From IMG/VR virus record IMGVR_UViG_3300042691_042003, positions 182,082 to 246,081 of that record: a DNA stretch of 64,000 nucleotides. One strand, given 5' to 3'. Position numbers and translations under genes: made by a program. This document shows, one piece after another, positions 1 to 64,000 of this stretch (its first letter is position 1; each line of letters begins with the position of its first letter). The notes beneath the pieces were generated by a model. That model was not told where the DNA came from. It searched no databases and was given only the letters and a program-made list of their open reading frames with translations.

Positions 1-1473
1 AATCTCAGACCTGGTCATATTGCTAAACCTCTTCGTATGCTCGATCCTTTAGCAACGACTATTCCTTCTGTTGCCGGTAATGGATATCCTGTTCCTCCTC
101 GTTCTCTTCCACAAAGAGCTCTTGTTGCTGAACAATCCGATATTTCAGGTGATATGAATTTCTTCGCTCTCGGATTTGGTGGTCAAATCGTAATGAGATC
201 TTCCGAATGGATTATGAATGGTCCTGGAACCGACTTTACTGTATTTGAAACTACATGGGGTGATCCTTCTTGTCGTCCTTCAAATTCCGAACAAGCTCTT
301 ATTGAGATTTCCGAAGATGGTGTTAATTGGATGACTCCTGGTTCTTTAAGTACAGGTCTTGGAGGTGCTTATAACTCTTGTTATAATGGTTCATTCGATA
401 TCACACCTCTTATGAAGATTCAATTTATACGTATTACTGATCGTACTAATCCTGATTGGAGAGTTCAAGGTGATGGCAATGATGGTTATGATGTAGATGG
501 TATCGTTGTAAATTATTCTCTTCCACCTACTGCATTTTCTGCTCCACAATCACCTATATGTGATTATCAGCAAGGAGTTGCTTCTCAATATGTAGGTGCT
601 GCAGGAAATTTCCCTGGTCGTGGAATTGTTTCGACTCGTAAGAATTTCTCTAAAGCTAATATTAATGAAGATGGATTCCCCACTGCTGCAATGACTAATC
701 CTGGTCTTCGTGATTCCGGTCCTGCTAGTGGATCTTATAATTTCTTCTCTCTCGGTTTTGGTGGTTGGGCTTGTCTTCAACTTCCTTATACTGTGTTTAA
801 TGGTCCTGGTCCTGAATTCTATTCATTCGAAACGACTTGGAATAATCAGCCTTGTCCTAATTATCCAGAAAGAGCTAATGTTTCGGTTTCGGTTGATGGA
901 ACAAATTGGTCTTCAACTGTACTAATTTGTAAAGATGCTCTTGGTATTGTTGGAACCTCTTCAGCTATTGATTTATCTTCATTCGGACCTGAATTCTCTA
1001 TGGTTAATTTTATTCGTTTTCAAGAAGCATCTAATCCTGCTGATTTTGGTGGAGGTGCTGATGGTTATGATATGGATAATATTGTTATTTCTCAGCTACC
1101 ACCTCCTACTCCAAGTGCTACACCAACTGGATTTTCTTGTGAAACGATTACCTCAAATCGTATTGCTATCGTAGAAGGTCAAAACACTTATATGGATGGT
1201 GGAATTCCTGAAGAGATGTTTCCTCTCGAAATCGTAGGAGGAAATGTAGTTACTGATAAGCTTTCTTTCTTTGCAACTATCGCTGAAGAAGGAACCTATC
1301 ATTACACTGTAAGAAGCTATCAAGGAACTTTTGTTTCTGAAGGTCTTCTTCAAGGATCTCTTTTCGAAACACCTACTACAGAAGTTGATGTTAGGAATTT
1401 TAGTAATGGAGTTTACTTCTTAACTCTCTCTTCTAATACAACTAAAGAAACCGTTAAGTTCGTAAAGAACTAA
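1..1473 (+). CDS. Secreted/cell-surface protein with duplicated LGFGG domain and T9SS C-terminal sorting domain; 5'-truncated by window
   Basis: Frame is open from base 1 (NLRPGHIAKPLR-M). Two repeats of F(A/S)LGFGG...NGPG..F..FETTW...DGY; C-terminus EVDVRNFSNGVYFLTLSSNTTKETVKFVKN matches the Por/T9SS type A CTD pattern. Confidence 0.75.
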   Translation, partial: NLRPGHIAKPLRMLDPLATTIPSVAGNGYPVPPRSLPQRALVAEQSDISGDMNFFALGFGGQIVMRSSEWIMNGPGTDFTVFETTWGDPSCRPSNSEQALIEISEDGVNWMTPGSLSTGLGGAYNSCYNGSFDITPLMKIQFIRITDRTNPDWRVQGDGNDGYDVDGIVVNYSLPPTAFSAPQSPICDYQQGVASQYVGAAGNFPGRGIVSTRKNFSKANINEDGFPTAAMTNPGLRDSGPASGSYNFFSLGFGGWACLQLPYTVFNGPGPEFYSFETTWNNQPCPNYPERANVSVSVDGTNWSSTVLICKDALGIVGTSSAIDLSSFGPEFSMVNFIRFQEASNPADFGGGADGYDMDNIVISQLPPPTPSATPTGFSCETITSNRIAIVEGQNTYMDGGIPEEMFPLEIVGGNVVTDKLSFFATIAEEGTYHYTVRSYQGTFVSEGLLQGSLFETPTTEVDVRNFSNGVYFLTLSSNTTKETVKFVKN

Positions 1474-1491
1474 TCGTTTAAGTACTTACAC

Positions 1492-1516
1492 AAAGGGCTC
1501 GAAAGAGCCCTTTTTT
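1492..1516 (+). terminator. Rho-independent terminator
   Basis: AAAGGGCTC-GAAA-GAGCCCTTT followed by T tract. Confidence 0.85.
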
Positions 1517-1573
1517 GTGCTTTACTTCATATGATAAATATCTAGAAATAAATTTAAGAAAATACTTCATATA

Positions 1574-1831
1574 ATGAAAAATCTATTTACTTACGAAGAA
1601 TTTTTAAACGAAGGGTCTACTAAGGTTGATGGAATCAATATAATTGATACCAAATACGTAGTAGCTCATAATTTCAAAAAACCCAGTGGAAAGGGCGTTT
1701 GGAAATGGTCTTTTTATTCAGACGGAGGAGATTCAGTAAAGACTCCTATTATGGATTATGAAAAGGCTAAAAAATGGGCAGCTGATTGGGCTAAGTTTAA
1801 AAAAGAACCTTGGGTTTATTTATTACCTTAA
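1574..1831 (+). CDS. Hypothetical protein with capsid-targeting-like N-terminus
   Basis: MKNLFTYEEFLNE N-terminus shared with other ORFs in window. Confidence 0.6.
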   Translation: MKNLFTYEEFLNEGSTKVDGINIIDTKYVVAHNFKKPSGKGVWKWSFYSDGGDSVKTPIMDYEKAKKWAADWAKFKKEPWVYLLP

Positions 1832-1846
1832 AAAAAAATTAATTTT

Positions 1847-2815
1847 ATGAAAAGAATTTTTTATCTCATTGGAGCTCTCTTCCTTTTTTCTTCTTGTCGC
1901 AGAGAAGACATGGAAATCAAAAACCCGGAAACCTCTCCATCGGTTGAAGTAAGACAATGTGCTTCTATGGATGTTCTTCAAAAACAACTACAAGAAGATC
2001 CTCAACTTCAATCTCGTATGGATGAAATCGAAACCAATCTTGAAAAGAATCAAAATCTTATGAAGATGGGTCGATTAGTAAATGGTGTTTATGAAATTCC
2101 TGTTTGGGTTAATGTTCTTTATAGAACATCTGCTGAAAATATTTCTCAAACTCAAATTCAATCTCAGATTGATGTACTTAACGAAGATTTCGGAGGAACA
2201 AATACAGATAATGTTTTAGTCCCTTCTACTTTTTCAACATTGAAAGCCGGAAATTGTAATATCCGTTTTGTTCTACAAGGTGTTACTCGTAAATCAACTA
2301 CGAAAACTTCTTGGAGGACTGATAATTCTATGAAGATTTCTTCTAAGGGAGGAATTAATCCTACTTCGCCTACGATATATTTAAATCTATGGGTCTGCAC
2401 TCTCGCTAATGGTATTCTAGGTTATGCTCAATTTCCAGGAGGATCTTCATCAACTGATGGTGTTGTTATTCTAAATACTGCCTTTGGTAGAACAGGAACT
2501 GCTACAGCTCCTTTCAATAAAGGTCGAACTGCTACTCATGAAGTTGGTCATTGGTTAAACCTTCGTCATATTTGGGGTGATGCTACTTGTGGTTCTGATT
2601 TAGTTAACGATACACCAACTCATAATACTGCTAATTACGGTTGTCCAGCAGCTGGTCATCGTTCAACTTGTACTGGAACTCCAATTGAAATGTGGATGAA
2701 TTACATGGATTACACTGACGATGCTTGTATGTATATGTTTTCTACTGGTCAAAAATCTAGAATGTTAGCTACTTTTGCTTCAGGAGGTGGAAGAACATCG
2801 TTTGCTCAACCTTAA
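1847..2815 (+). CDS. M43 (pappalysin/ulilysin-type) zinc metalloprotease, lipoprotein
   Basis: Lipobox LFSSC; prodomain Cys-switch RQCASM; HEVGHWLNLRHIWGD (HExxHxxxxxH); NYMDYTDD Met-turn. Confidence 0.9.
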   Translation: MKRIFYLIGALFLFSSCRREDMEIKNPETSPSVEVRQCASMDVLQKQLQEDPQLQSRMDEIETNLEKNQNLMKMGRLVNGVYEIPVWVNVLYRTSAENISQTQIQSQIDVLNEDFGGTNTDNVLVPSTFSTLKAGNCNIRFVLQGVTRKSTTKTSWRTDNSMKISSKGGINPTSPTIYLNLWVCTLANGILGYAQFPGGSSSTDGVVILNTAFGRTGTATAPFNKGRTATHEVGHWLNLRHIWGDATCGSDLVNDTPTHNTANYGCPAAGHRSTCTGTPIEMWMNYMDYTDDACMYMFSTGQKSRMLATFASGGGRTSFAQP

Positions 2816-2823
2816 TTATATTC

Positions 2824-3021
2824 ATGAAATTTTACACATATCGAGAATTTTTAAGAGAAACAGCATATAAAGAAGGAAGTAGAAAACCTACGGCTGAAGA
2901 AAGAAAAATGTGTAAATCACCTGAAGGATTTAATCAGATAAATCATTGTAAAGCTTTAGGACTTATTCCTAGAGCAGATGGAACTAAAAAAGTAAGTGCT
3001 AAATACGGAGGAGATGAGTAA
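2824..3021 (+). CDS. Small hypothetical protein with capsid-targeting-like N-terminus
   Basis: MKFYTYREFLRE. Confidence 0.55.
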   Translation: MKFYTYREFLRETAYKEGSRKPTAEERKMCKSPEGFNQINHCKALGLIPRADGTKKVSAKYGGDE

Positions 3022-3742
3022 TGAAAAAGATATACAAAGACTAGAAGATTCTTTAAGAGGAAAAAAGGTCTTACTAATAACGACCTCAAATCGTTGGTCA
3101 GGACATGATGAAAAACCTAAATCGTCTAGACTTGCTGAAGATCTGGCTAGTAGAATAGGTGCTACAATAATCGATGCTTCAAAATTGAAGATTTATCCTT
3201 GCGAAGGAAATGTTTCTACCGTTAACGGAAATAATTGCGGAACCGTAGATTCGGTTTTAAAAGATAAGACGAAGAATCCTACAGGTCATCATCGTTGCTG
3301 GGTTAATATTAATAATCCTGACGACGAACTTTGGAAAATAAGCAAAGAGATATTTGAAGCTGATTCGGTTATATTTTTCGCTTCAGTGAGATGGGGTCAA
3401 ACCAATTCTATATATCAGAAACTAATTGAACGCTTGAATTGGCTAGAGAATCGCTGGGCAACTTTGAATGAGAGTAATATATTATCTAATAAGGAGGCAG
3501 GCATTGTCCTAGTTGGCCACAATTGGAACGGAGTAGCTGTTTTAGAAACACAAAAGCAGGTTCTACAATTTTATGGATTTAAAGTTCCTACCGAGCTATC
3601 GTTTAATTGGCAATGGACTACCGATCCTTTTGATGAATCCGAAGAAGGATATATTCAAGATCCTAAAGATTTTAAAGAAGATTTCGATCTTGGATCTAAT
3701 GCATTGAAAGAATCATTCAAAAACTTCTTTAAAAGACAATGA
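3014..3742 (+). CDS. Flavodoxin-like / NAD(P)H-dependent FMN reductase family protein
   Basis: TTSNR...SSRLA, IYPCEGNVS...C, ADSVIFFASVRWGQTNSIYQKLIER; start reassigned to ATG 3014. Confidence 0.7.
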   Translation: MSNEKDIQRLEDSLRGKKVLLITTSNRWSGHDEKPKSSRLAEDLASRIGATIIDASKLKIYPCEGNVSTVNGNNCGTVDSVLKDKTKNPTGHHRCWVNINNPDDELWKISKEIFEADSVIFFASVRWGQTNSIYQKLIERLNWLENRWATLNESNILSNKEAGIVLVGHNWNGVAVLETQKQVLQFYGFKVPTELSFNWQWTTDPFDESEEGYIQDPKDFKEDFDLGSNALKESFKNFFKRQ

Positions 3743-4536
3743 AAAACTTAAAAACTTACGATAGCTGGTTAAACGAATCAACAGTTAATCCTATTGTTGA
3801 GGATCTACTTACTCGAGCAGAACCTACTATTCAACAGATGGTTAATAAATCTAGAGAGGCTTATGTAAAACAATACGAGCGTGAATGGACTAAATACGAT
3901 GAAACGATTACTAGATTAATCATAATCTCTAATATGGTTCGATCTTTTGAAATTTACACGAAACATAATGATAGACTCGTTAACTTTACAGTAAAAGGAT
4001 CTCCAAAAGGATCTATGGTTATCTCTTCACAAATTGATAGAGATGATGTACCTCATTATTTAGATACTGAGGTAATTTATGCAGGAGGTTATAATATACA
4101 GGCTCTTCATTATCGTTATATTACGAAAACTAATCTAACTAAAACTGGAGCTGATACTAAAACCAAAGAGATAGGAGAAAAAATCAAGAAGCTTTCTAAA
4201 CTAGAAAAGATCAATAAAGAAATCGAAGGTTATCAAGTCAGAATAAAGGATAATGAAGAGAATATTGCTAAAAATTCGGTTTTATCTGACGAAGAAATAA
4301 AGGATATTCTTCGAAAGGGAGAGTATGGTAGTACTATTGATACTACATGGGAGGATGTTGTTCGGAACAAAGGACATTACGATAGCAGAGAAGAATTTGA
4401 AACTTCTCAAAAGCAATACATCGCTGATAAGATAGTATTTTGGAAAAGGGTAAATATTGAATGGAAAATTGAGAATAATACAGCTCTCAAAAAGAATATT
4501 GACAAATTAAATAAGAAGTTAGAGACACTAATATGA
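3739..4536 (+). CDS. Hypothetical, probable internal head protein
   Basis: MKNLKTYDSWLNES N-terminus; coiled-coil C-terminus. Confidence 0.55.
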   Translation: MKNLKTYDSWLNESTVNPIVEDLLTRAEPTIQQMVNKSREAYVKQYEREWTKYDETITRLIIISNMVRSFEIYTKHNDRLVNFTVKGSPKGSMVISSQIDRDDVPHYLDTEVIYAGGYNIQALHYRYITKTNLTKTGADTKTKEIGEKIKKLSKLEKINKEIEGYQVRIKDNEENIAKNSVLSDEEIKDILRKGEYGSTIDTTWEDVVRNKGHYDSREEFETSQKQYIADKIVFWKRVNIEWKIENNTALKKNIDKLNKKLETLI

Positions 4537-5129
4537 AAAATTTAAAAACCTACGATAGCTGGTTGAATGAATCTTCAGGAGATTTACTTAAACCGAGAAG
4601 AGGAAAACCTTTACATTTCGATCATCGTAGATATCCAGAGCTAGCAGGTGAGCTATTCAATCTTATTACTATTGCATATTCGGAAATAGGAGGTCATGCT
4701 AAAATAAAATCTCCAGAAGATATATTCTCTGATCCTGATTGGAATTTCTGGGAAGGTACTGATATTCACGGATCTCAAGATTTTGATATTGTCATATTTG
4801 GACAGAAGACTAAATTTGGTGTTAAATTTTCCGGGGTAGGACATGATGGAGCAAAAGATTCTAAGAAAGAGTATCTAGACGATCTAGGATCAGATCTTAA
4901 GAATTTAGGTTATTACATCGAATCTTCTGGAAAATTTGCTGAGATTCTTATGAATAAGTACGGATGTCCTGTTATAGAAGACGAAGAAACTGTTGTTAAA
5001 GTTCTTGGTAAACAAGTTCAATGGATAGGTAAATCTTCAAATCCAGAACATACAGGTAATGGATGGTACATACGTAATATTGGAGGACATCCTCATGAAA
5101 AGATTTTAATAGGTCGACCAAAAAGTTAA
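4533..5129 (+). CDS. Hypothetical, probable internal head protein
   Basis: First 14 aa identical to previous ORF (MKNLKTYDSWLNES), remainder unrelated. Confidence 0.55.
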   Translation: MKNLKTYDSWLNESSGDLLKPRRGKPLHFDHRRYPELAGELFNLITIAYSEIGGHAKIKSPEDIFSDPDWNFWEGTDIHGSQDFDIVIFGQKTKFGVKFSGVGHDGAKDSKKEYLDDLGSDLKNLGYYIESSGKFAEILMNKYGCPVIEDEETVVKVLGKQVQWIGKSSNPEHTGNGWYIRNIGGHPHEKILIGRPKS

Positions 5130-5130
5130 A

Positions 5131-5185
5131 ATAAATTTTTTTCTTTACGATATTTGTTTTATATTAGCAATACAAAAATAAACAT
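5131..5185 (+). promoter_or_regulatory. Early-type promoter (short module)
   Basis: T-tract...TTTTATATTAGC core shared with repeated module. Confidence 0.55.
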
Positions 5186-6262
5186 ATGAAAGTAGCATTT
5201 TTTCACGGACTCGAATCTTCCCCAAAATCTGATAAGAATGATTCTCTTCGAAGCAGATTCGATTTTGTTTACGATCCTCCTATGTCTTATTCGGATCCCG
5301 GTCTATTTGAAAAAGTTCTTTCAGAGGTAAAGAAAAATAAAATCGATCTTCTTATAGGGTCATCTATGGGTGGTTGGTTCGCTTATTGCATTTCAACTCT
5401 GACAGGAATTCCCACACTCCTTTTTAATCCTGCAGTTCATAGTCGTCCTACGGAACCTAAAGTTAGGATAGGAAATAGAAAAGCAAAGCACACTCTAGTC
5501 TTAGGAATCAGTGATAAAGTTATTATTCCTATGCTTACTCAAAATTGGGTTGCAAAAGAAGGAATCGGTTCTTTTAAAATTTATTTTGAATCTAACGAAC
5601 ATAGGACCCCTATCGATATTTTTGATAAATGGTTAGATATTGAATCTAATAAGCTTAATGAAGAATGGTCAACCGAATCTCCTGGTAATTTACCTGATTG
5701 GTCATTTTTACCAGTTGAAGCTGTACAAACTCTCGTTCCTAATTTTCTAACTAAACGCCCTCCAGTTGGTAATCTCGTAATTGAAGATGATTCGGAAGTT
5801 GAAGATGTTAGAAGAGCACAAAGAAACCTTTCTGATGATGATATTCGTTTTATTAAAGATGCACATGATTCTCCTCCTCAGATTTTCTATCAATGGTTAG
5901 TTCTTAGAGGTGAAAGGCCAAAAATGTCCGATATTAAATCTTATTGGGAATCGAAGAAAAATCTTGATATGATTGGATTTCTAAAGAAAGCAACGAAGAG
6001 ACCGAGACCTTATCAGAAATACGATGATGTAAAAATTCCTACGGATATTGAAACTGAAGATTACTCATTTCCTTCAGGACATTCATATGGTGCTTATTTT
6101 ATAGCATCAAAACTTTCTCAAAAATATCCTCATCTCGTCGATGGACTTTTTTTACTTGCTGATCGAATTGCTAGAAGTCGTATACAAGCAGGAGTTCATT
6201 ATCCTTCTGATGTAGAAGCAGGTAAAATGCTTGCCCTAAAAATGTCACAAAAAGATTTCTAA
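5186..6262 (+). CDS. YqiA/YcfP-like alpha/beta esterase fused to PAP2 (vanadium haloperoxidase-like) phosphatase
   Basis: FFHGLESS, GSSMGG nucleophile elbow, NPAV; C-terminal KRPRP...FPSGHS...SRIQAGVHYPSDV. Confidence 0.85.
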   Translation: MKVAFFHGLESSPKSDKNDSLRSRFDFVYDPPMSYSDPGLFEKVLSEVKKNKIDLLIGSSMGGWFAYCISTLTGIPTLLFNPAVHSRPTEPKVRIGNRKAKHTLVLGISDKVIIPMLTQNWVAKEGIGSFKIYFESNEHRTPIDIFDKWLDIESNKLNEEWSTESPGNLPDWSFLPVEAVQTLVPNFLTKRPPVGNLVIEDDSEVEDVRRAQRNLSDDDIRFIKDAHDSPPQIFYQWLVLRGERPKMSDIKSYWESKKNLDMIGFLKKATKRPRPYQKYDDVKIPTDIETEDYSFPSGHSYGAYFIASKLSQKYPHLVDGLFLLADRIARSRIQAGVHYPSDVEAGKMLALKMSQKDF

Positions 6263-10005: not shown

Positions 10006-13596
<3,591 letters not shown>

Positions 13597-22468: not shown

Positions 22469-22545
22469 GGGCTCTTAGCTCATTAGGTTAGAGCAACTGA
22501 CTCATAATCAGTAGGTGGCTGGTTCGATCCCAGCAGGGCCCACCA
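22469..22545 (+). tRNA. tRNA-Ile2 (CAT, lysidine type)
   Basis: GGGCTCT/AGGGCCC acceptor, ACTGA-CTCATAA-TCAGT anticodon arm, GCTGG-TTCGATC-CCAGC T arm, encoded CCA; resembles IleX rather than fMet. Confidence 0.9.
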
Positions 22546-43408: not shown

Positions 43409-43806
43409 GGGCCCGACTTGGAATTGATTTACGATACATTTTTTTCGTATGCAAGCAGAGTTAGTTGGAAACTCTTAAATAACCTAACAGAATTTTAAAT
43501 GGCGAATCTTTCGTTAATGCAGACGGCAAAGTGTTCTATATGGACACTACTGCTGTTTCTTATGATGAGCCTGTCTTAATGGCAGCCTAATCAGTCGTGC
43601 GGTAACAGCCGATCCTTAAAACAAAGTTACAACCTGCGGTTCCGTTAGAGGTGCTACCCATTTAAGTGAACCTCCCACAATTGCAAGTGACAATGGAAAA
43701 ATAGGAACTTGATATTTTGTTTATTTAGAAAAATAAACTAAGCTTGTGAATGAGTGCATTAAAATGATTGGGAAAGACATGGGTTCGAATCCCATCGGGT
43801 CCACCA
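43409..43806 (+). ncRNA. ssrA: tmRNA (phage-encoded)
   Basis: 5' GGGCCCGACTTGGAATTGA, 3' ATGGG-TTCGAAT-CCCAT-CGGGTCC-ACCA with G3:U70; tag ORF 43501-43590 GESFVNADGKVFYMDTTAVSYDEPVLMAA*. Confidence 0.92.
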
Positions 43807-60913: not shown

Positions 60914-62467
60914 GTGGGAAATTTTTCGAATAAATTAGATTTTAGAAATTTAAGAAAAAGGCCTCTCAGTTGGACTGAGATGGATAATATGTTTCAAAAA
61001 CCGAATGTTTGGCGTTCGGATGTTACATATGAACAAGGAATGGTTGTTTTATGGGATGATTCGGTTGCTCCGGTAGGAGATACAATAAATGGAGCTCTAT
61101 CTTTTTGGATTTGTCAACAAGATCACGTTTCATCTTTATCAAATATCCCTAGTGTTCCTAATCAATCTTATTGGAATCGAGTAGGAACTTCTACTTTAGT
61201 TAATAAAGGAGATACCGGACCAATGGGTCCTCAAGGTCCTACTGGAGCTACTGGTAGGACAGGACCTACTGGAATATCCATTACCGGACCTACTGGAGTT
61301 ACAGGGGGAACTGGTATGACTGGACCAACAGGAATTGCAGGACCACAAGGCCCTGCTGGTATAAAAGGAGATCAAGGTCTAAGAGGAGCTACAGGTGCTA
61401 CAATTGCAGGACCTACAGGATCTACTGGTGTTACAGGTGCTACTGGGGTTACTGGACCGATGGGGGTTACAGGGCCTTCAGGAGGACCTCTAGGACCTAC
61501 TGGTCCTACTGGAGTAACAGGTATTACTGGTGTTACAGGACCTACCTCACCCGGTCCTACTGGTGAGACAGGTCCTACTGGAGTAACTGGTCCTACCGGG
61601 ATACAAGGTGCTACTGGAGTAACAGGATTAAGAGGACCTACTGGTGGTATATCTTCTACTCCTGTTCAATTATTAGATATTTTTTCCGATATAGCCACTT
61701 CAGTTCCTCAAGCAGGAAACAGATATATGTGGTATAATTTATTATCTACAGGAGTAACTTCTTCCATATTTACTATAGATAATTCTCAAGGAGCAACCTT
61801 TGGAACTAGAATAACTTTCTTAAGAGAAGGAAAATATTATCTTTCTGCTAGAACTGCATTTTCAATAAATACTGGGGTCTTTACTACTATAAGGGGATAT
61901 TTTGGTTATGCAAATAGTACTGGGAATGAATTTGATTTCAAAGGTAATCCTTCTTATGGATTAGAAAATTATCTTTATTTAAGTCCTGGATCAAGAGATT
62001 CTTTTGAAGTATCTGGAGTTCTAGATGTAAATAGTTCATGGGTAACCGGACCTTCAGGACCTTATAAACTTTACGTTAAAATGGAGAATCAATCTCCTGG
62101 AGGAGCAAGTGCTGCTATAATCCCTTATGCTACCAGATTATCTATTATAAGTATGGATGGTGGTGTAGGTCCTGCAGGATCTAATAATTTTACAACATAT
62201 TTTTCTACAGGAACTACATATTCAGTACCTTCATTTAATTTTTCAAAATATATAGGAGTTTCAGGAACAACTTCGATATATTTACATAGTGGAGTTGATG
62301 GTGAAGCTTTAATTGTTAAAGATGAAAAGGGAATCGCATCCTCTTCGAATATTTTTTTGTATCCGGTTTTGGGAGAAGGAATTGAAGCTGGATCTAGCGC
62401 TGTAATAAATACCGATTATGGATCTCTTAATTTAGTAAGAAGAGGTTCTACTTGGTGGAAAATTTAA
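60914..62467 (+). CDS. Collagen-like (GPT/GVT) fibre protein
   Basis: Long G-X-T tract; C-terminal LIVKDEKG.A...I......IE....[10 protein letters not shown]. Confidence 0.8.

Positions 62468-62499: not shown

Positions 62500-64000
<1,501 letters not shown>

What the first reader, a model, noticed from the sequence alone, without database searches (positions are those of the whole stretch)
1..2815. Phage-encoded T9SS cargo and lipoprotein metalloprotease
The first ORF ends in a type A T9SS C-terminal domain and the 1847 ORF is a lipobox-bearing M43 metalloprotease. Both have the architecture of Bacteroidota cell-surface proteins. A phage may be routing its own proteins through the host type IX secretion system, for example to remodel the infected cell surface, block superinfection or degrade receptors.
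Basis: partly seen in the sequence, partly recalled or inferred. Interest (0 to 1): 0.6.

Follow-up and report, generated by a model that had tools for sequence, protein, structure and literature searches.

The report
Jumbo phage carries host surface-protein genes
A 246-kb T4-like phage of freshwater Bacteroidota carries intact copies of two host cell-surface genes, a sugar-binding protein tagged for type IX secretion and a lipid-anchored zinc protease; this is a clear second example of a rarely reported phenomenon, and its function has not been tested.

Summary
ORF1 is cut by the window start. The full gene encodes 531 aa: a Sec signal peptide, two discoidin/CBM32-like domains and a T9SS type A C-terminal domain (CTD). 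The ORF at 1847-2815 is an intact ulilysin-like M43 zymogen with a lipobox.

The region is not misassembled host DNA. The window starts 182 kb inside a 246-kb T4-like phage genome that has a T4-type portal, prohead protease, major head protein and baseplate.

Both genes are nested among chromosomal genes of Cytophagales. In the nearest bacterial genome they lie 2.2 kb apart (61% and 83% identity), and that genome encodes the T9SS translocon SprA; the phage does not.

The pair recurs in other phage contigs. One is a 465-kb phage whose portal and capsid are only 37-44% identical to this phage's, while the two genes are 72% and 82% identical. Phage copies are under purifying selection (dN/dS about 0.15-0.18).

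Best reading: host-derived accessory genes whose products leave the infected cell by host Sec, T9SS and lipoprotein pathways. I favour support of nutrient scavenging; surface remodelling or superinfection exclusion remains open.

Phage-encoded T9SS cargo was already reported in silico in 2020 (Bellas et al.), so I rate this a new member of a known kind.

The parts
1..1473 (+). 3' 1,473 nt (stop codon included) of the 531-aa T9SS cargo gene (P0001). The first 41 codons, including the signal peptide, lie just upstream of the window at G000 181959-182081.
   Evidence: homologues
127..519 (+). First discoidin / F5-8 type C / CBM32-like beta-sandwich domain (about residues 84-214)
   Evidence: PF00754 27.3 bits, just under the cut-off of 28.2. 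AF2 model with pLDDT 83. Foldseek matches to neuropilin b1b2, factor V/VIII C domains, fucolectin and CBM32 at E 4e-7 to 1e-4.
715..1101 (+). Second discoidin-like domain (about residues 280-408)
   Evidence: the internal repeat is visible in alignment A1
1207..1470 (+). T9SS type A C-terminal sorting domain (about residues 444-531)
   Evidence: TIGR04183 and PF18962. 48 of 48 relatives match. The CTD-only AF2 model has pLDDT 89 and is a beta-sandwich. It resembles the mirolase CTD 8qb1_A and the NucA CTD in the T9SS complex 8glk_D.
1492..1523 (+). Intrinsic-terminator-like hairpin (9-bp stem, 5 GC pairs) plus T tract, directly after ORF1
   Evidence: L001 2992-3013 plus tail; sequence
1574..1831 (+). 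85-aa ORF between the two genes. It starts with the MKNL.TYEEFLNE motif shared by 28 ORFs of this phage. Its stop lies 15 nt before the M43 start, so it is probably co-transcribed with M43.
1847..2815 (+). 322-aa ulilysin-like M43B metalloprotease lipoprotein precursor (P0002)
1847..1897 (+). Lipoprotein signal peptide ending in the lipobox LFSSC (Cys17). It is followed by RREDME, which resembles the Bacteroidota surface-lipoprotein export signal.
   Evidence: The export-signal consensus K-(D/E)2 comes from PMC5080379.
1952..1966 (+). Propeptide segment RQCAS. Its Cys aligns with the conserved propeptide Cys of pro-ulilysin.
   Evidence: alignment to 8cd8/8cdb; conserved in all relatives inspected
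2537..2569 (+). Zinc-binding motif HEVGHWLNLRH
2726..2740 (+). Met-turn segment CMYMF

Best explanation
The two genes are host-derived accessory genes ('morons', AMG-like) of a T4-like jumbo phage that infects a freshwater member of the Cytophagales. SHOWN: both are intact, both lie deep inside a bona fide phage genome, and both are nested phylogenetically among bacterial chromosomal genes. In the nearest bacterial genome the two orthologues are near neighbours. The pair is shared by distantly related phages and is under purifying selection. INFERRED: during infection the lectin precursor crosses the inner membrane by Sec, and the host T9SS translocon recognises its type A CTD. It is then released or attached to the cell surface. 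The protease precursor is lipidated at Cys17 and sorted to the outer membrane, probably to its outer face because of the acidic stretch after the cysteine. It is activated by loss of the propeptide that holds the switch cysteine. FAVOURED ROLE (about 40% of my belief): the phage copies replace or boost the host's own surface lectin and protease while host gene expression is shut down. This would keep extracellular scavenging of peptides, and with the phage's lipoprotein nuclease also nucleotides, running through a long jumbo-phage infection. Surface remodelling or exclusion is the main alternative.
For: Phage context:
- The window is bases 182,082-246,081 of a 246-kb IMG/VR virus record.
- That record has a T4-type major head protein, portal and baseplate wedge and a gp21-like prohead protease.
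- It also has collagen-like tail fibres and an NAD-dependent DNA ligase, five tRNAs and a tmRNA.
- 305 of 320 ORFs are on one strand.

Host origin:
- Orthologues of the lectin sit in a conserved chromosomal neighbourhood (LptF/G, DapD and others) in Cytophagales.
- In the tree, the phage copies fall in a clade nested inside bacterial sequences.
- The phage M43 copies form a 14-sequence clade next to a group that holds the G535 and G549 bacterial copies.
- On G535 contig C81 the two genes lie 2.2 kb apart.
- Gene GC is 36-39%, against 31% for the phage and 46% for the bacterial orthologues.

Selection and spread:
- dN/dS between phage copies is 0.15-0.18.
- G000 and G003 share 72% and 82% identity for the pair but 37-44% for head protein and portal.
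- Those two genes are the only blastp matches to G000 across 21.6 kb of G003 around the pair.
- The same pair is found in a 20.8-kb and a 28-kb phage-like contig.

Export competence:
-.
- SprA is present in G535, G549 and G001 and absent from both phages.

Scavenging theme:
- The phage encodes a lipoprotein Endonuclease_NS.
- In two other phage-like contigs the nuclease gene lies directly upstream of M43, near PRPP synthetase and thioredoxin genes.
Against: There is no experimental evidence for secretion, lipidation, activity or timing of expression. The CTD score of this single protein is only just above the curated cut-off, and the fold match to solved CTDs is not significant by Foldseek E-value (2e-3 to 7e-3) because the fold is a generic Ig-like sandwich. 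The host is inferred from gene similarity only; there is no CRISPR or isolate link. Nothing separates nutrient scavenging from surface remodelling. The genes lie in a variable region with many small phage-specific genes and about 9 kb from tail-fibre genes, which would also suit an exclusion or adsorption-related role. The only sign of RNA is two 151-nt contigs in one metatranscriptome library, which could be carried-over DNA.
Confidence: 0.6

Rival explanations
1. Surface remodelling for the phage's own protection. The exported protease trims host surface proteins and the lectin masks surface glycans. Later phages, and the phage's own progeny, then no longer adsorb to the infected cell or its debris. 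This is superinfection exclusion or receptor destruction.
For: The same export evidence applies as for the best explanation. The genes lie in a variable region about 9 kb upstream of collagen-like tail-fibre genes. Content of the island differs between related phages: an OmpA-like gene in G003 and L031, a second CTD protein in L063, and the lectin missing from the P0007 contig. Bellas et al. made the same suggestion for variable T9SS cargo genes. Phage lipoproteins that block receptors are known, for example T5 Llp (own knowledge).
Against: The protease is 83% identical to the bacterial chromosomal enzyme, with the same propeptide and active site. There is no sign of a new specificity. No receptor is known. 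The association with a nuclease and nucleotide-metabolism genes is not explained.
Confidence: 0.25
2. The proteins act outside the export pathways. They would be virion-associated (a glycan-binding decoration or tail accessory, and a virion protease) or lysis-associated, with the signal sequences as relics.
For: Discoidin/CBM32-type domains are found in carbohydrate-active enzymes and other proteins that bind surface glycans. Tail-fibre genes are nearby.
Against: The signal peptide, CTD and lipobox are conserved in all phage copies and under purifying selection. Conserved cysteines suggest an extracytoplasmic protein. There are no PHROG matches to structural families. A protein with a working Sec signal would leave the cytoplasm, where virions assemble.
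Confidence: 0.05
3. Neutral passengers: recently captured host DNA with no function for the phage.
For: GC content is raised relative to the phage, as expected for foreign DNA.
Against: Synonymous sites between phage and bacterial copies are saturated, so the capture is old. Both genes are intact in at least four phage contigs. dN/dS is 0.15-0.18. The pair is better conserved than the core structural genes.
Confidence: 0.05
4. Assembly artefact: bacterial DNA joined to a phage contig.
For: The genes have close bacterial orthologues.
Against: The region is 182 kb inside the contig with phage-type genes on both sides. The same pair sits in the 465-kb phage G003 and in other phage-like contigs. 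Error-free contigs from run X1 tile from the ORF1 3' end through M43 into downstream phage genes, with a 56-nt gap inside M43 (L001 4107-4162). A run from a different study holds exact pieces of ORF1, M43 and downstream genes. Identity to the best bacterial genome is only 61% and 83%.
Confidence: 0.02

Closest known systems
'Cryophage' T9SS cargo genes (Bellas et al. 2020, Nat Commun, PMC7468147)
   Same: Genes in a phage genome that encode proteins with T9SS type A sorting domains. They lie in variable genomic islands, were inferred in silico only, and the authors likewise suggested that the phage hijacks host T9SS.
   Different: The cargo there was an endoglucanase, a GH39 and a PA14 protein, and the habitat was glacier cryoconite. 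Here the cargo is a non-enzymatic tandem discoidin lectin paired with an M43 lipoprotein, in T4-like jumbo phages of fresh water. This case also has identified host chromosomal orthologues, spread across distantly related phages, and a measurement of purifying selection.
Ulilysin (Methanosarcina acetivorans) and mirolysin (Tannerella forsythia), family M43B
   Same: E 6e-68 and 2e-63 by sequence. Same HExxHxxxxxH motif with Asn in place of the usual metzincin Gly, same Met-turn, and a propeptide cysteine aligned with that of pro-ulilysin.
   Different: The phage enzyme is a lipoprotein. Mirolysin is, from my own knowledge, a T9SS cargo with a CTD. Some other viral contigs do carry M43 fused to a CTD.
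Auxiliary metabolic genes of phages (for example cyanophage psbA)
   Same: A host-derived gene, kept under purifying selection, that plausibly sustains a host function during infection.
   Different: The products here are exported surface proteins that depend on host secretion machinery, not cytoplasmic or membrane metabolic enzymes. Any benefit is unproven.
Phage lipoproteins for superinfection exclusion (T5 Llp, Cor of phi80/N15)
   Same: A phage-encoded lipoprotein sent to the host outer membrane during infection (own knowledge).
   Different: Those are small receptor-blocking proteins without enzymatic activity and without close host orthologues.

Membership tests
T9SS type A cargo (TIGR04183 / PF18962 CTD proteins) | C-terminal domain scoring above the curated cut-off | tested here: met
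   TIGR04183 scores 23.7-25.9 bits against 23. PF18962 is borderline at 23.2-27.3 against 27. 48 of 48 family members match TIGR04183.
T9SS type A cargo (TIGR04183 / PF18962 CTD proteins) | N-terminal Sec signal peptide | tested here: met
   The N-terminus has a basic start, a hydrophobic core and an AQA site, just upstream of the window. This was judged by inspection and a hydrophobicity scan; no SignalP was run.
T9SS type A cargo (TIGR04183 / PF18962 CTD proteins) | CTD folds as an Ig-like beta-sandwich like solved CTDs | tested here: inconclusive
   AF2 gives pLDDT 89 and an all-beta domain with six long strands. The mirolase CTD 8qb1_A gives TM 0.67/0.73, and the NucA CTD in the translocon complex 8glk_D gives TMt 0.75. 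E-values are 2e-3 to 7e-3, and many unrelated sandwiches score alike.
T9SS type A cargo (TIGR04183 / PF18962 CTD proteins) | The organism that makes the protein has a T9SS | tested here: met
   SprA (TIGR04189) is found above cut-off in the three bacterial genomes with the closest orthologues and in neither phage. That these genomes represent the host is an inference.
T9SS type A cargo (TIGR04183 / PF18962 CTD proteins) | Secretion depends on T9SS and the CTD is removed | not testable with these tools
   Needs expression in wild-type and T9SS-mutant cells.
Peptidase M43B (ulilysin / pappalysin family) | Pfam PF05572 above cut-off and similarity to solved members | tested here: met
   58.1 bits against 23. 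Ulilysin E 6e-68, mirolysin E 2e-63.
Peptidase M43B (ulilysin / pappalysin family) | Zinc-binding motif HExxHxxxxxH and Met-turn | tested here: met
   HEVGHWLNLRH at residues 231-241 and CMYMF at 294-298, aligned with ulilysin.
Peptidase M43B (ulilysin / pappalysin family) | Propeptide with a latency cysteine | tested here: met
   Residues 31-80 align with the pro-ulilysin propeptide, and the Cys in RQC aligns with the Cys in RRC. It is conserved in all 32 relatives inspected.
Peptidase M43B (ulilysin / pappalysin family) | Proteolytic activity | not testable with these tools
   Needs an enzyme assay.
TIGR03952 (BF0631-type metalloproteinase lipoprotein, equivalog) | Score above the equivalog cut-off | tested here: not met
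   39.7 bits against 208.1. It is related to this family but is not a member.
Bacterial lipoprotein (signal peptidase II substrate), surface-exposed class of Bacteroidota | Lipobox with an invariant Cys after a hydrophobic signal sequence | tested here: met
   LFSSC with Cys17. A lipobox Cys is present in every relative inspected. Judged by inspection only.
Bacterial lipoprotein (signal peptidase II substrate), surface-exposed class of Bacteroidota | Lipoprotein export signal K-(D/E)2 or similar just after the Cys | tested here: inconclusive
   The window protein has C-R-R-E-D-M-E, with Arg where the consensus has Lys. Phage relatives have C-Q-K-S-E-D. The consensus comes from PMC5080379, and tolerance for Arg is unknown.
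Discoidin / F5-8 type C domain (PF00754) | Pfam score above cut-off, or the fold | tested here: inconclusive
   The sequence score of 27.3 bits is just under the cut-off of 28.2. The fold match to tandem discoidin domains is strong: neuropilin b1b2 and factor V/VIII C domains at E about 1e-6, probability 1.0.
Phage-encoded T9SS cargo (kind described by Bellas et al. 2020) | The gene sits on a bona fide phage genome rather than on host DNA | tested here: met
   Head, portal, protease, baseplate and tail-fibre genes are on the same 246-kb record. The pair recurs in other phage contigs.

The most novel reading that the evidence does not exclude
The pair is part of a mobile 'secretome island' that moves between distantly related T4-like jumbo phages of Bacteroidota. 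The island holds varying sets of a lipoprotein nuclease, a lipoprotein or CTD-tagged M43 protease, T9SS-tagged lectins and an OmpA-like protein. Through it, the phage would re-equip the surface of the infected cell using host T9SS and lipoprotein sorting. That would make phage use of the type IX system a widespread and selectable trait rather than a single curiosity.
Probability: 0.45. Interest if true: 0.65.

Novelty: new member of a known kind. Interest (0 to 1): 0.5.

Why it matters
T9SS is the main route by which Bacteroidota build their cell surface and secrete hydrolases. Whether phages exploit it has been raised once, from sequence alone. This locus gives a cleaner case. Host orthologues are identified. 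The gene pair is kept under purifying selection and is exchanged between phages whose capsid genes are only about 40% identical. Related viral contigs carry the protease fused directly to a CTD. It provides concrete constructs for testing whether a phage protein is exported by T9SS during infection and what that does for the phage. It also suggests that the surface and exoenzyme activities of infected freshwater Bacteroidota may be partly virus-encoded.

Tried and rejected
- blastn of window 1-6000 against 50,697 GenBank phage records found nothing.
- tblastn of the lectin against the same records found nothing. The M43 gave one weak match, 32.5% in a 7.6-kb faecal fragment.
- PHROGs had no family for either protein.
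- A profile of the lectin family against PDB sequences found nothing at E<=1.
- No type B CTD (TIGR04131) is present in the phage, and there is only one type A CTD in the whole genome.
- The CTD protein was not found widely in Bacteroidota: 1 of 401 sampled genomes of the phylum and 13 of 301 of the order. These are samples and do not prove absence.
- I first took the 51-sequence clade in the lectin tree to be all phage. Look-ups showed P0148 (next to rpoB) and P0167 (next to a thiolase gene) to be bacterial, so only the inner 25-sequence clade is a candidate phage clade. Even that is labelled by context for only five members: the query, P0128, P0129, P0132 and P0160.
- The T4 late-promoter word TATAAATA lies 81 nt upstream of ORF1, but it is not enriched in the genome (35 found, 52 expected), so I make no promoter claim.
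- The sigma-70 promoter scan was no better than shuffled sequence.
- An exact terminal repeat of 50 nt or more was not found. The first 30 nt recur 69 nt from the end, so the 'DTR' label rests on a short overlap.
- The big representative protein search and the complex predictor were not used. The family scans settled the identities, and I do not claim that the two proteins bind each other.
Full report
**1. What is at the coordinates**

The window is bases 182,082-246,081 of a 246,081-bp IMG/VR virus record. Window position 1 is therefore not a contig end. ORF1 is cut by the window. The full gene, L001:1378-2973, encodes 531 aa (P0001).

Its N-terminus has a basic start, a hydrophobic core and an AQA cleavage site, as expected for a Sec signal peptide. 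It is followed by a conserved cysteine-containing segment and two repeats that hit F5/8 type C just under the Pfam cut-off (27.3 against 28.2 bits). The C-terminal domain hits the T9SS type A sorting domain. TIGR04183 scores 23.7-25.9 bits against a cut-off of 23. PF18962 scores 23.2-27.3 against 27.

That single score is marginal, so I tested the family. All 48 aligned relatives match TIGR04183 at E<=0.01, best 2.3e-8. The extreme C-terminus is strongly conserved in the alignment (GVYFLTL..KETVKFVK).

An AF2 model of the whole protein has pLDDT 83 and pTM 0.76. It shows two discoidin-type sandwiches. Foldseek matches them to neuropilin b1b2, factor V/VIII C1-C2, a fucolectin and CBM32 modules at E 4e-7 to 1e-4.

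A model of the last 96 residues has pLDDT 89 and is a beta-sandwich. Its best whole-domain matches include the solved CTD of mirolase (8qb1_A, TM 0.67/0.73) and the NucA CTD bound in the T9SS translocon (8glk_D). E-values are only 2e-3 to 7e-3, and many generic sandwiches score the same. The fold is compatible with a CTD but does not prove one.

The ORF at 1847-2815 (P0002) is a clear M43B enzyme:
- PF05572 scores 58 bits.
- phmmer gives E 6e-68 to pro-ulilysin over both propeptide and catalytic domain, and E 2e-63 to mirolysin.
- It has HEVGHWLNLRH, the Met-turn CMYMF and the propeptide cysteine.
- It starts with a lipoprotein signal peptide (LFSSC, Cys17) followed by RREDME.
- Phage relatives have C-Q-K-S-E-D at that position. 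Both resemble the Bacteroidota surface-lipoprotein export signal K-(D/E)2 (PMC5080379).

A strong terminator-like hairpin follows ORF1 (window 1492-1523). The M43 gene starts 15 nt after an 85-aa ORF and is probably co-transcribed with it.

**2. Is it phage or host DNA?**

The record has these phage hallmarks:
- a T4-type major head protein (phrog_138), portal (phrog_213) and baseplate wedge (phrog_219/6);
- RNR, an SbcC-like nuclease and a helicase;
- a gp21-like prohead protease between portal and head genes;
- collagen-like tail fibres and an NAD-dependent ligase;
- five tRNAs and a tmRNA;
- 305 of 320 ORFs on one strand.

The genes on both sides of the pair are small phage-type ORFs.

Error-free contigs from run X1 tile from the 3' end of ORF1 through M43 into the downstream genes, with a 56-nt gap inside M43. 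A run from a different study holds exact pieces of ORF1, M43 and downstream genes. I reject the misassembly explanation.

**3. Where the genes come from**

Both proteins have many relatives.

For the lectin, context look-ups show bacterial chromosomal orthologues in a conserved neighbourhood: START-domain gene, LptF/G, a glycosyltransferase, DapD, the lectin gene, then a histidine phosphatase. These are:
- P0200, 44% identity;
- P0188, 50%;
- a Catalimonadaceae MAG, 51%.

Others sit next to rpoB (P0148, 61%) or next to thioesterase and thiolase genes (P0167, 58%).

In the tree, every copy known to be on a phage falls in one well-supported 25-sequence clade. That clade is nested within these bacterial sequences.

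The family is narrow. It was found in 1 of 401 sampled Bacteroidota genomes and 13 of 301 genomes of the order Cytophagales.

The two best bacterial genomes are G535 and G549 (61% and 60% for the lectin). They also hold the closest bacterial M43, at 83% and 81%. On G535 contig C81 the gene order is LptF/G, an unknown gene, DapD, the lectin (+), thioesterase, thiolase, M43 (-), then a CCG-domain gene. So in the likely host lineage the two genes lie 2.2 kb apart and converge.

The phage M43 copies form a 14-sequence clade. It sits next to a group that holds the G535 and G549 copies, and the Chitinophagales enzymes lie further out.

GC content points the same way. The phage genes have 39% and 36.5% GC, between the phage average of 31% and the 46% of the bacterial orthologues. 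Synonymous sites between phage and bacterial copies are saturated, so the capture is not recent.

G535, G549 and the Catalimonadaceae MAG all encode the T9SS translocon SprA. The phages G000 and G003 do not.

**4. The pair in other phages**

- The 464,605-bp UViG G003 (CheckV 98% complete) has the lectin, two small ORFs, M43 and then an OmpA-like gene.
- A 20.8-kb contig with collagen-like tail-fibre genes has lectin, small ORF, M43.
- A 28-kb contig with split T4-type topoisomerase II has Endonuclease_NS, M43, the lectin and a second CTD protein (TIGR04183, 42.8 bits).
- A syntenic 54.6-kb contig has the same island without the lectin.
- A 77-kb contig has the lectin with the OmpA-like gene but no M43.

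G000 and G003 are only 37-44% identical in major head protein and portal. Across 21.6 kb of G003 around the pair, those two genes are the only blastp matches to G000. The lectin is nevertheless 72% identical and the M43 82%. dN/dS between phage copies is 0.15-0.18, with dS near 1, so the estimate is rough.

The pair is therefore maintained by selection. It has either moved between distant phages or been constrained far more than the capsid genes.

More widely, 12 IMG/VR contigs carry M43 relatives. In three of them the protease is fused to a type A CTD scoring above the cut-off: 41.8 bits in L071 and L072, and 24.4 bits in L078. The 172-kb record that holds L072 has a T4-type portal.

GenBank phage genomes hold no relative of the lectin and one weak M43 match.

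**5. Mechanism**

Shown: the genes are intact, host-derived, selected, and carry complete export and catalytic signals, and host-type genomes have a T9SS.

Inferred: Sec export, followed by T9SS translocation of the lectin and lipoprotein sorting of the protease zymogen to the outer membrane, probably its outer face.

For the biological role I favour support of host-type extracellular scavenging, for three reasons:
- The protease is nearly unchanged from the host enzyme.
- The island travels with a lipoprotein nuclease. G000 has its own copy at 148,828-149,706, whose signal-peptide coding sequence resembles that of M43.
- In the L063-type phages the island lies near PRPP synthetase and thioredoxin genes.

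Superinfection exclusion or receptor destruction is the main rival, and these data cannot exclude it. A structural role, neutral carriage and misassembly are all unlikely.

**6. Comparison with what is known, and novelty**

Bellas et al. 2020 (PMC7468147) described three variable genes with T9SS type A sorting domains in a cryoconite phage. [quoted passage not shown] My other literature searches found no further case.

This locus is therefore a new member of that kind. It adds a different cargo, a partner lipoprotein protease, identified host orthologues and neighbourhood, spread among distant jumbo phages, purifying selection, and related M43-CTD fusions on viral contigs. No experiment supports export in any of these cases.

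**7. Expression**

One riverine metatranscriptome library holds two exact 151-nt contigs inside ORF1 (L001 2204-2354 and 2384-2534 = window 704-854 and 884-1034). DNA carry-over cannot be excluded, so this is only a hint.

Noticed in passing
window 1574, 2824, 3739, 4533, 49600, 58283, 58674 (ORF starts); 28 ORFs in the whole genome G000: 28 of 320 ORFs begin with a shared motif such as MKNLKTYDSWLNES or MKNIPSFEEFLNES. They are clustered, including beside the portal-protease-head module. The motif resembles the T4 capsid targeting sequence of internal proteins, which the prohead protease cuts after a Glu (PMC9026906). The phage has a gp21-like protease at G000 82026-82358. These ORFs may encode a large set of capsid-packaged, injected proteins. 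The motif is not seen in the G003, L031 or L063 neighbours.
   Followed up: partly
G000 148828-149706 (outside the window; L002:1520-2395): A lipoprotein DNA/RNA non-specific endonuclease (PF01223, 176 bits; lipobox LISSC). The start of its signal peptide is 86% identical in DNA to that of the M43 gene. In two other phage-like contigs the equivalent nuclease gene lies directly upstream of M43.
   Followed up: partly
L071, L072 and L078 (IMG/VR contigs of 137, 172 and 160 kb): M43 proteases on viral contigs are fused to a T9SS type A CTD (TIGR04183 41.8, 41.8 and 24.4 bits). The 172-kb record also has a T4-type portal 37% identical to this phage's. IMG/VR labels that record a provirus.
   Followed up: partly
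window 5186-6262: A 358-aa fusion of a YqiA/UPF0227-type alpha/beta hydrolase (residues 5-86) with a PAP2 phosphatase domain (residues 264-350, catalytic motifs present). It may be another envelope- or lipid-directed activity.
   Followed up: no
window 43409-43806; tRNAs at 22469, 26141, 27057, 29275 and 29541: A phage-encoded tmRNA with a 29-residue tag, and five tRNAs (two Met, two Leu, one Arg).
   Followed up: no
L006 13207-14106 (G003) and L031 11635-12528: An OmpA-like gene of about 298 aa on the opposite strand lies next to the pair, or next to the lectin alone, in two other phage contigs. This phage has no such gene at that position.
   Followed up: no
window 10617-13406, 60914-62467, 62500-63999: Three large collagen-repeat tail-fibre-like genes (phrog_5073 and phrog_6320, E down to 5e-49). 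The last one runs off the window and lies at the end of the record.
   Followed up: no
window 2996-3742: A 248-aa ORF with a weak NADPH-dependent FMN reductase match (23.1 bits against a cut-off of 24). A similar FMN_red gene sits two genes downstream of the bacterial lectin orthologue in L036. This might be coincidence or a further trace of co-capture.
   Followed up: no
G000 1-200 and 246012-246081: The 'direct terminal repeat' of the record is only a 69-nt overlap, and its first 30 nt also recur at positions 88 and 148. The ends therefore lie in a short tandem repeat. CheckV completeness is given as 80%.
   Followed up: partly
window 704-854 and 884-1034: Two exact 151-nt contigs from a riverine metatranscriptome library fall inside ORF1. 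This may be transcription or DNA carry-over.
   Followed up: partly
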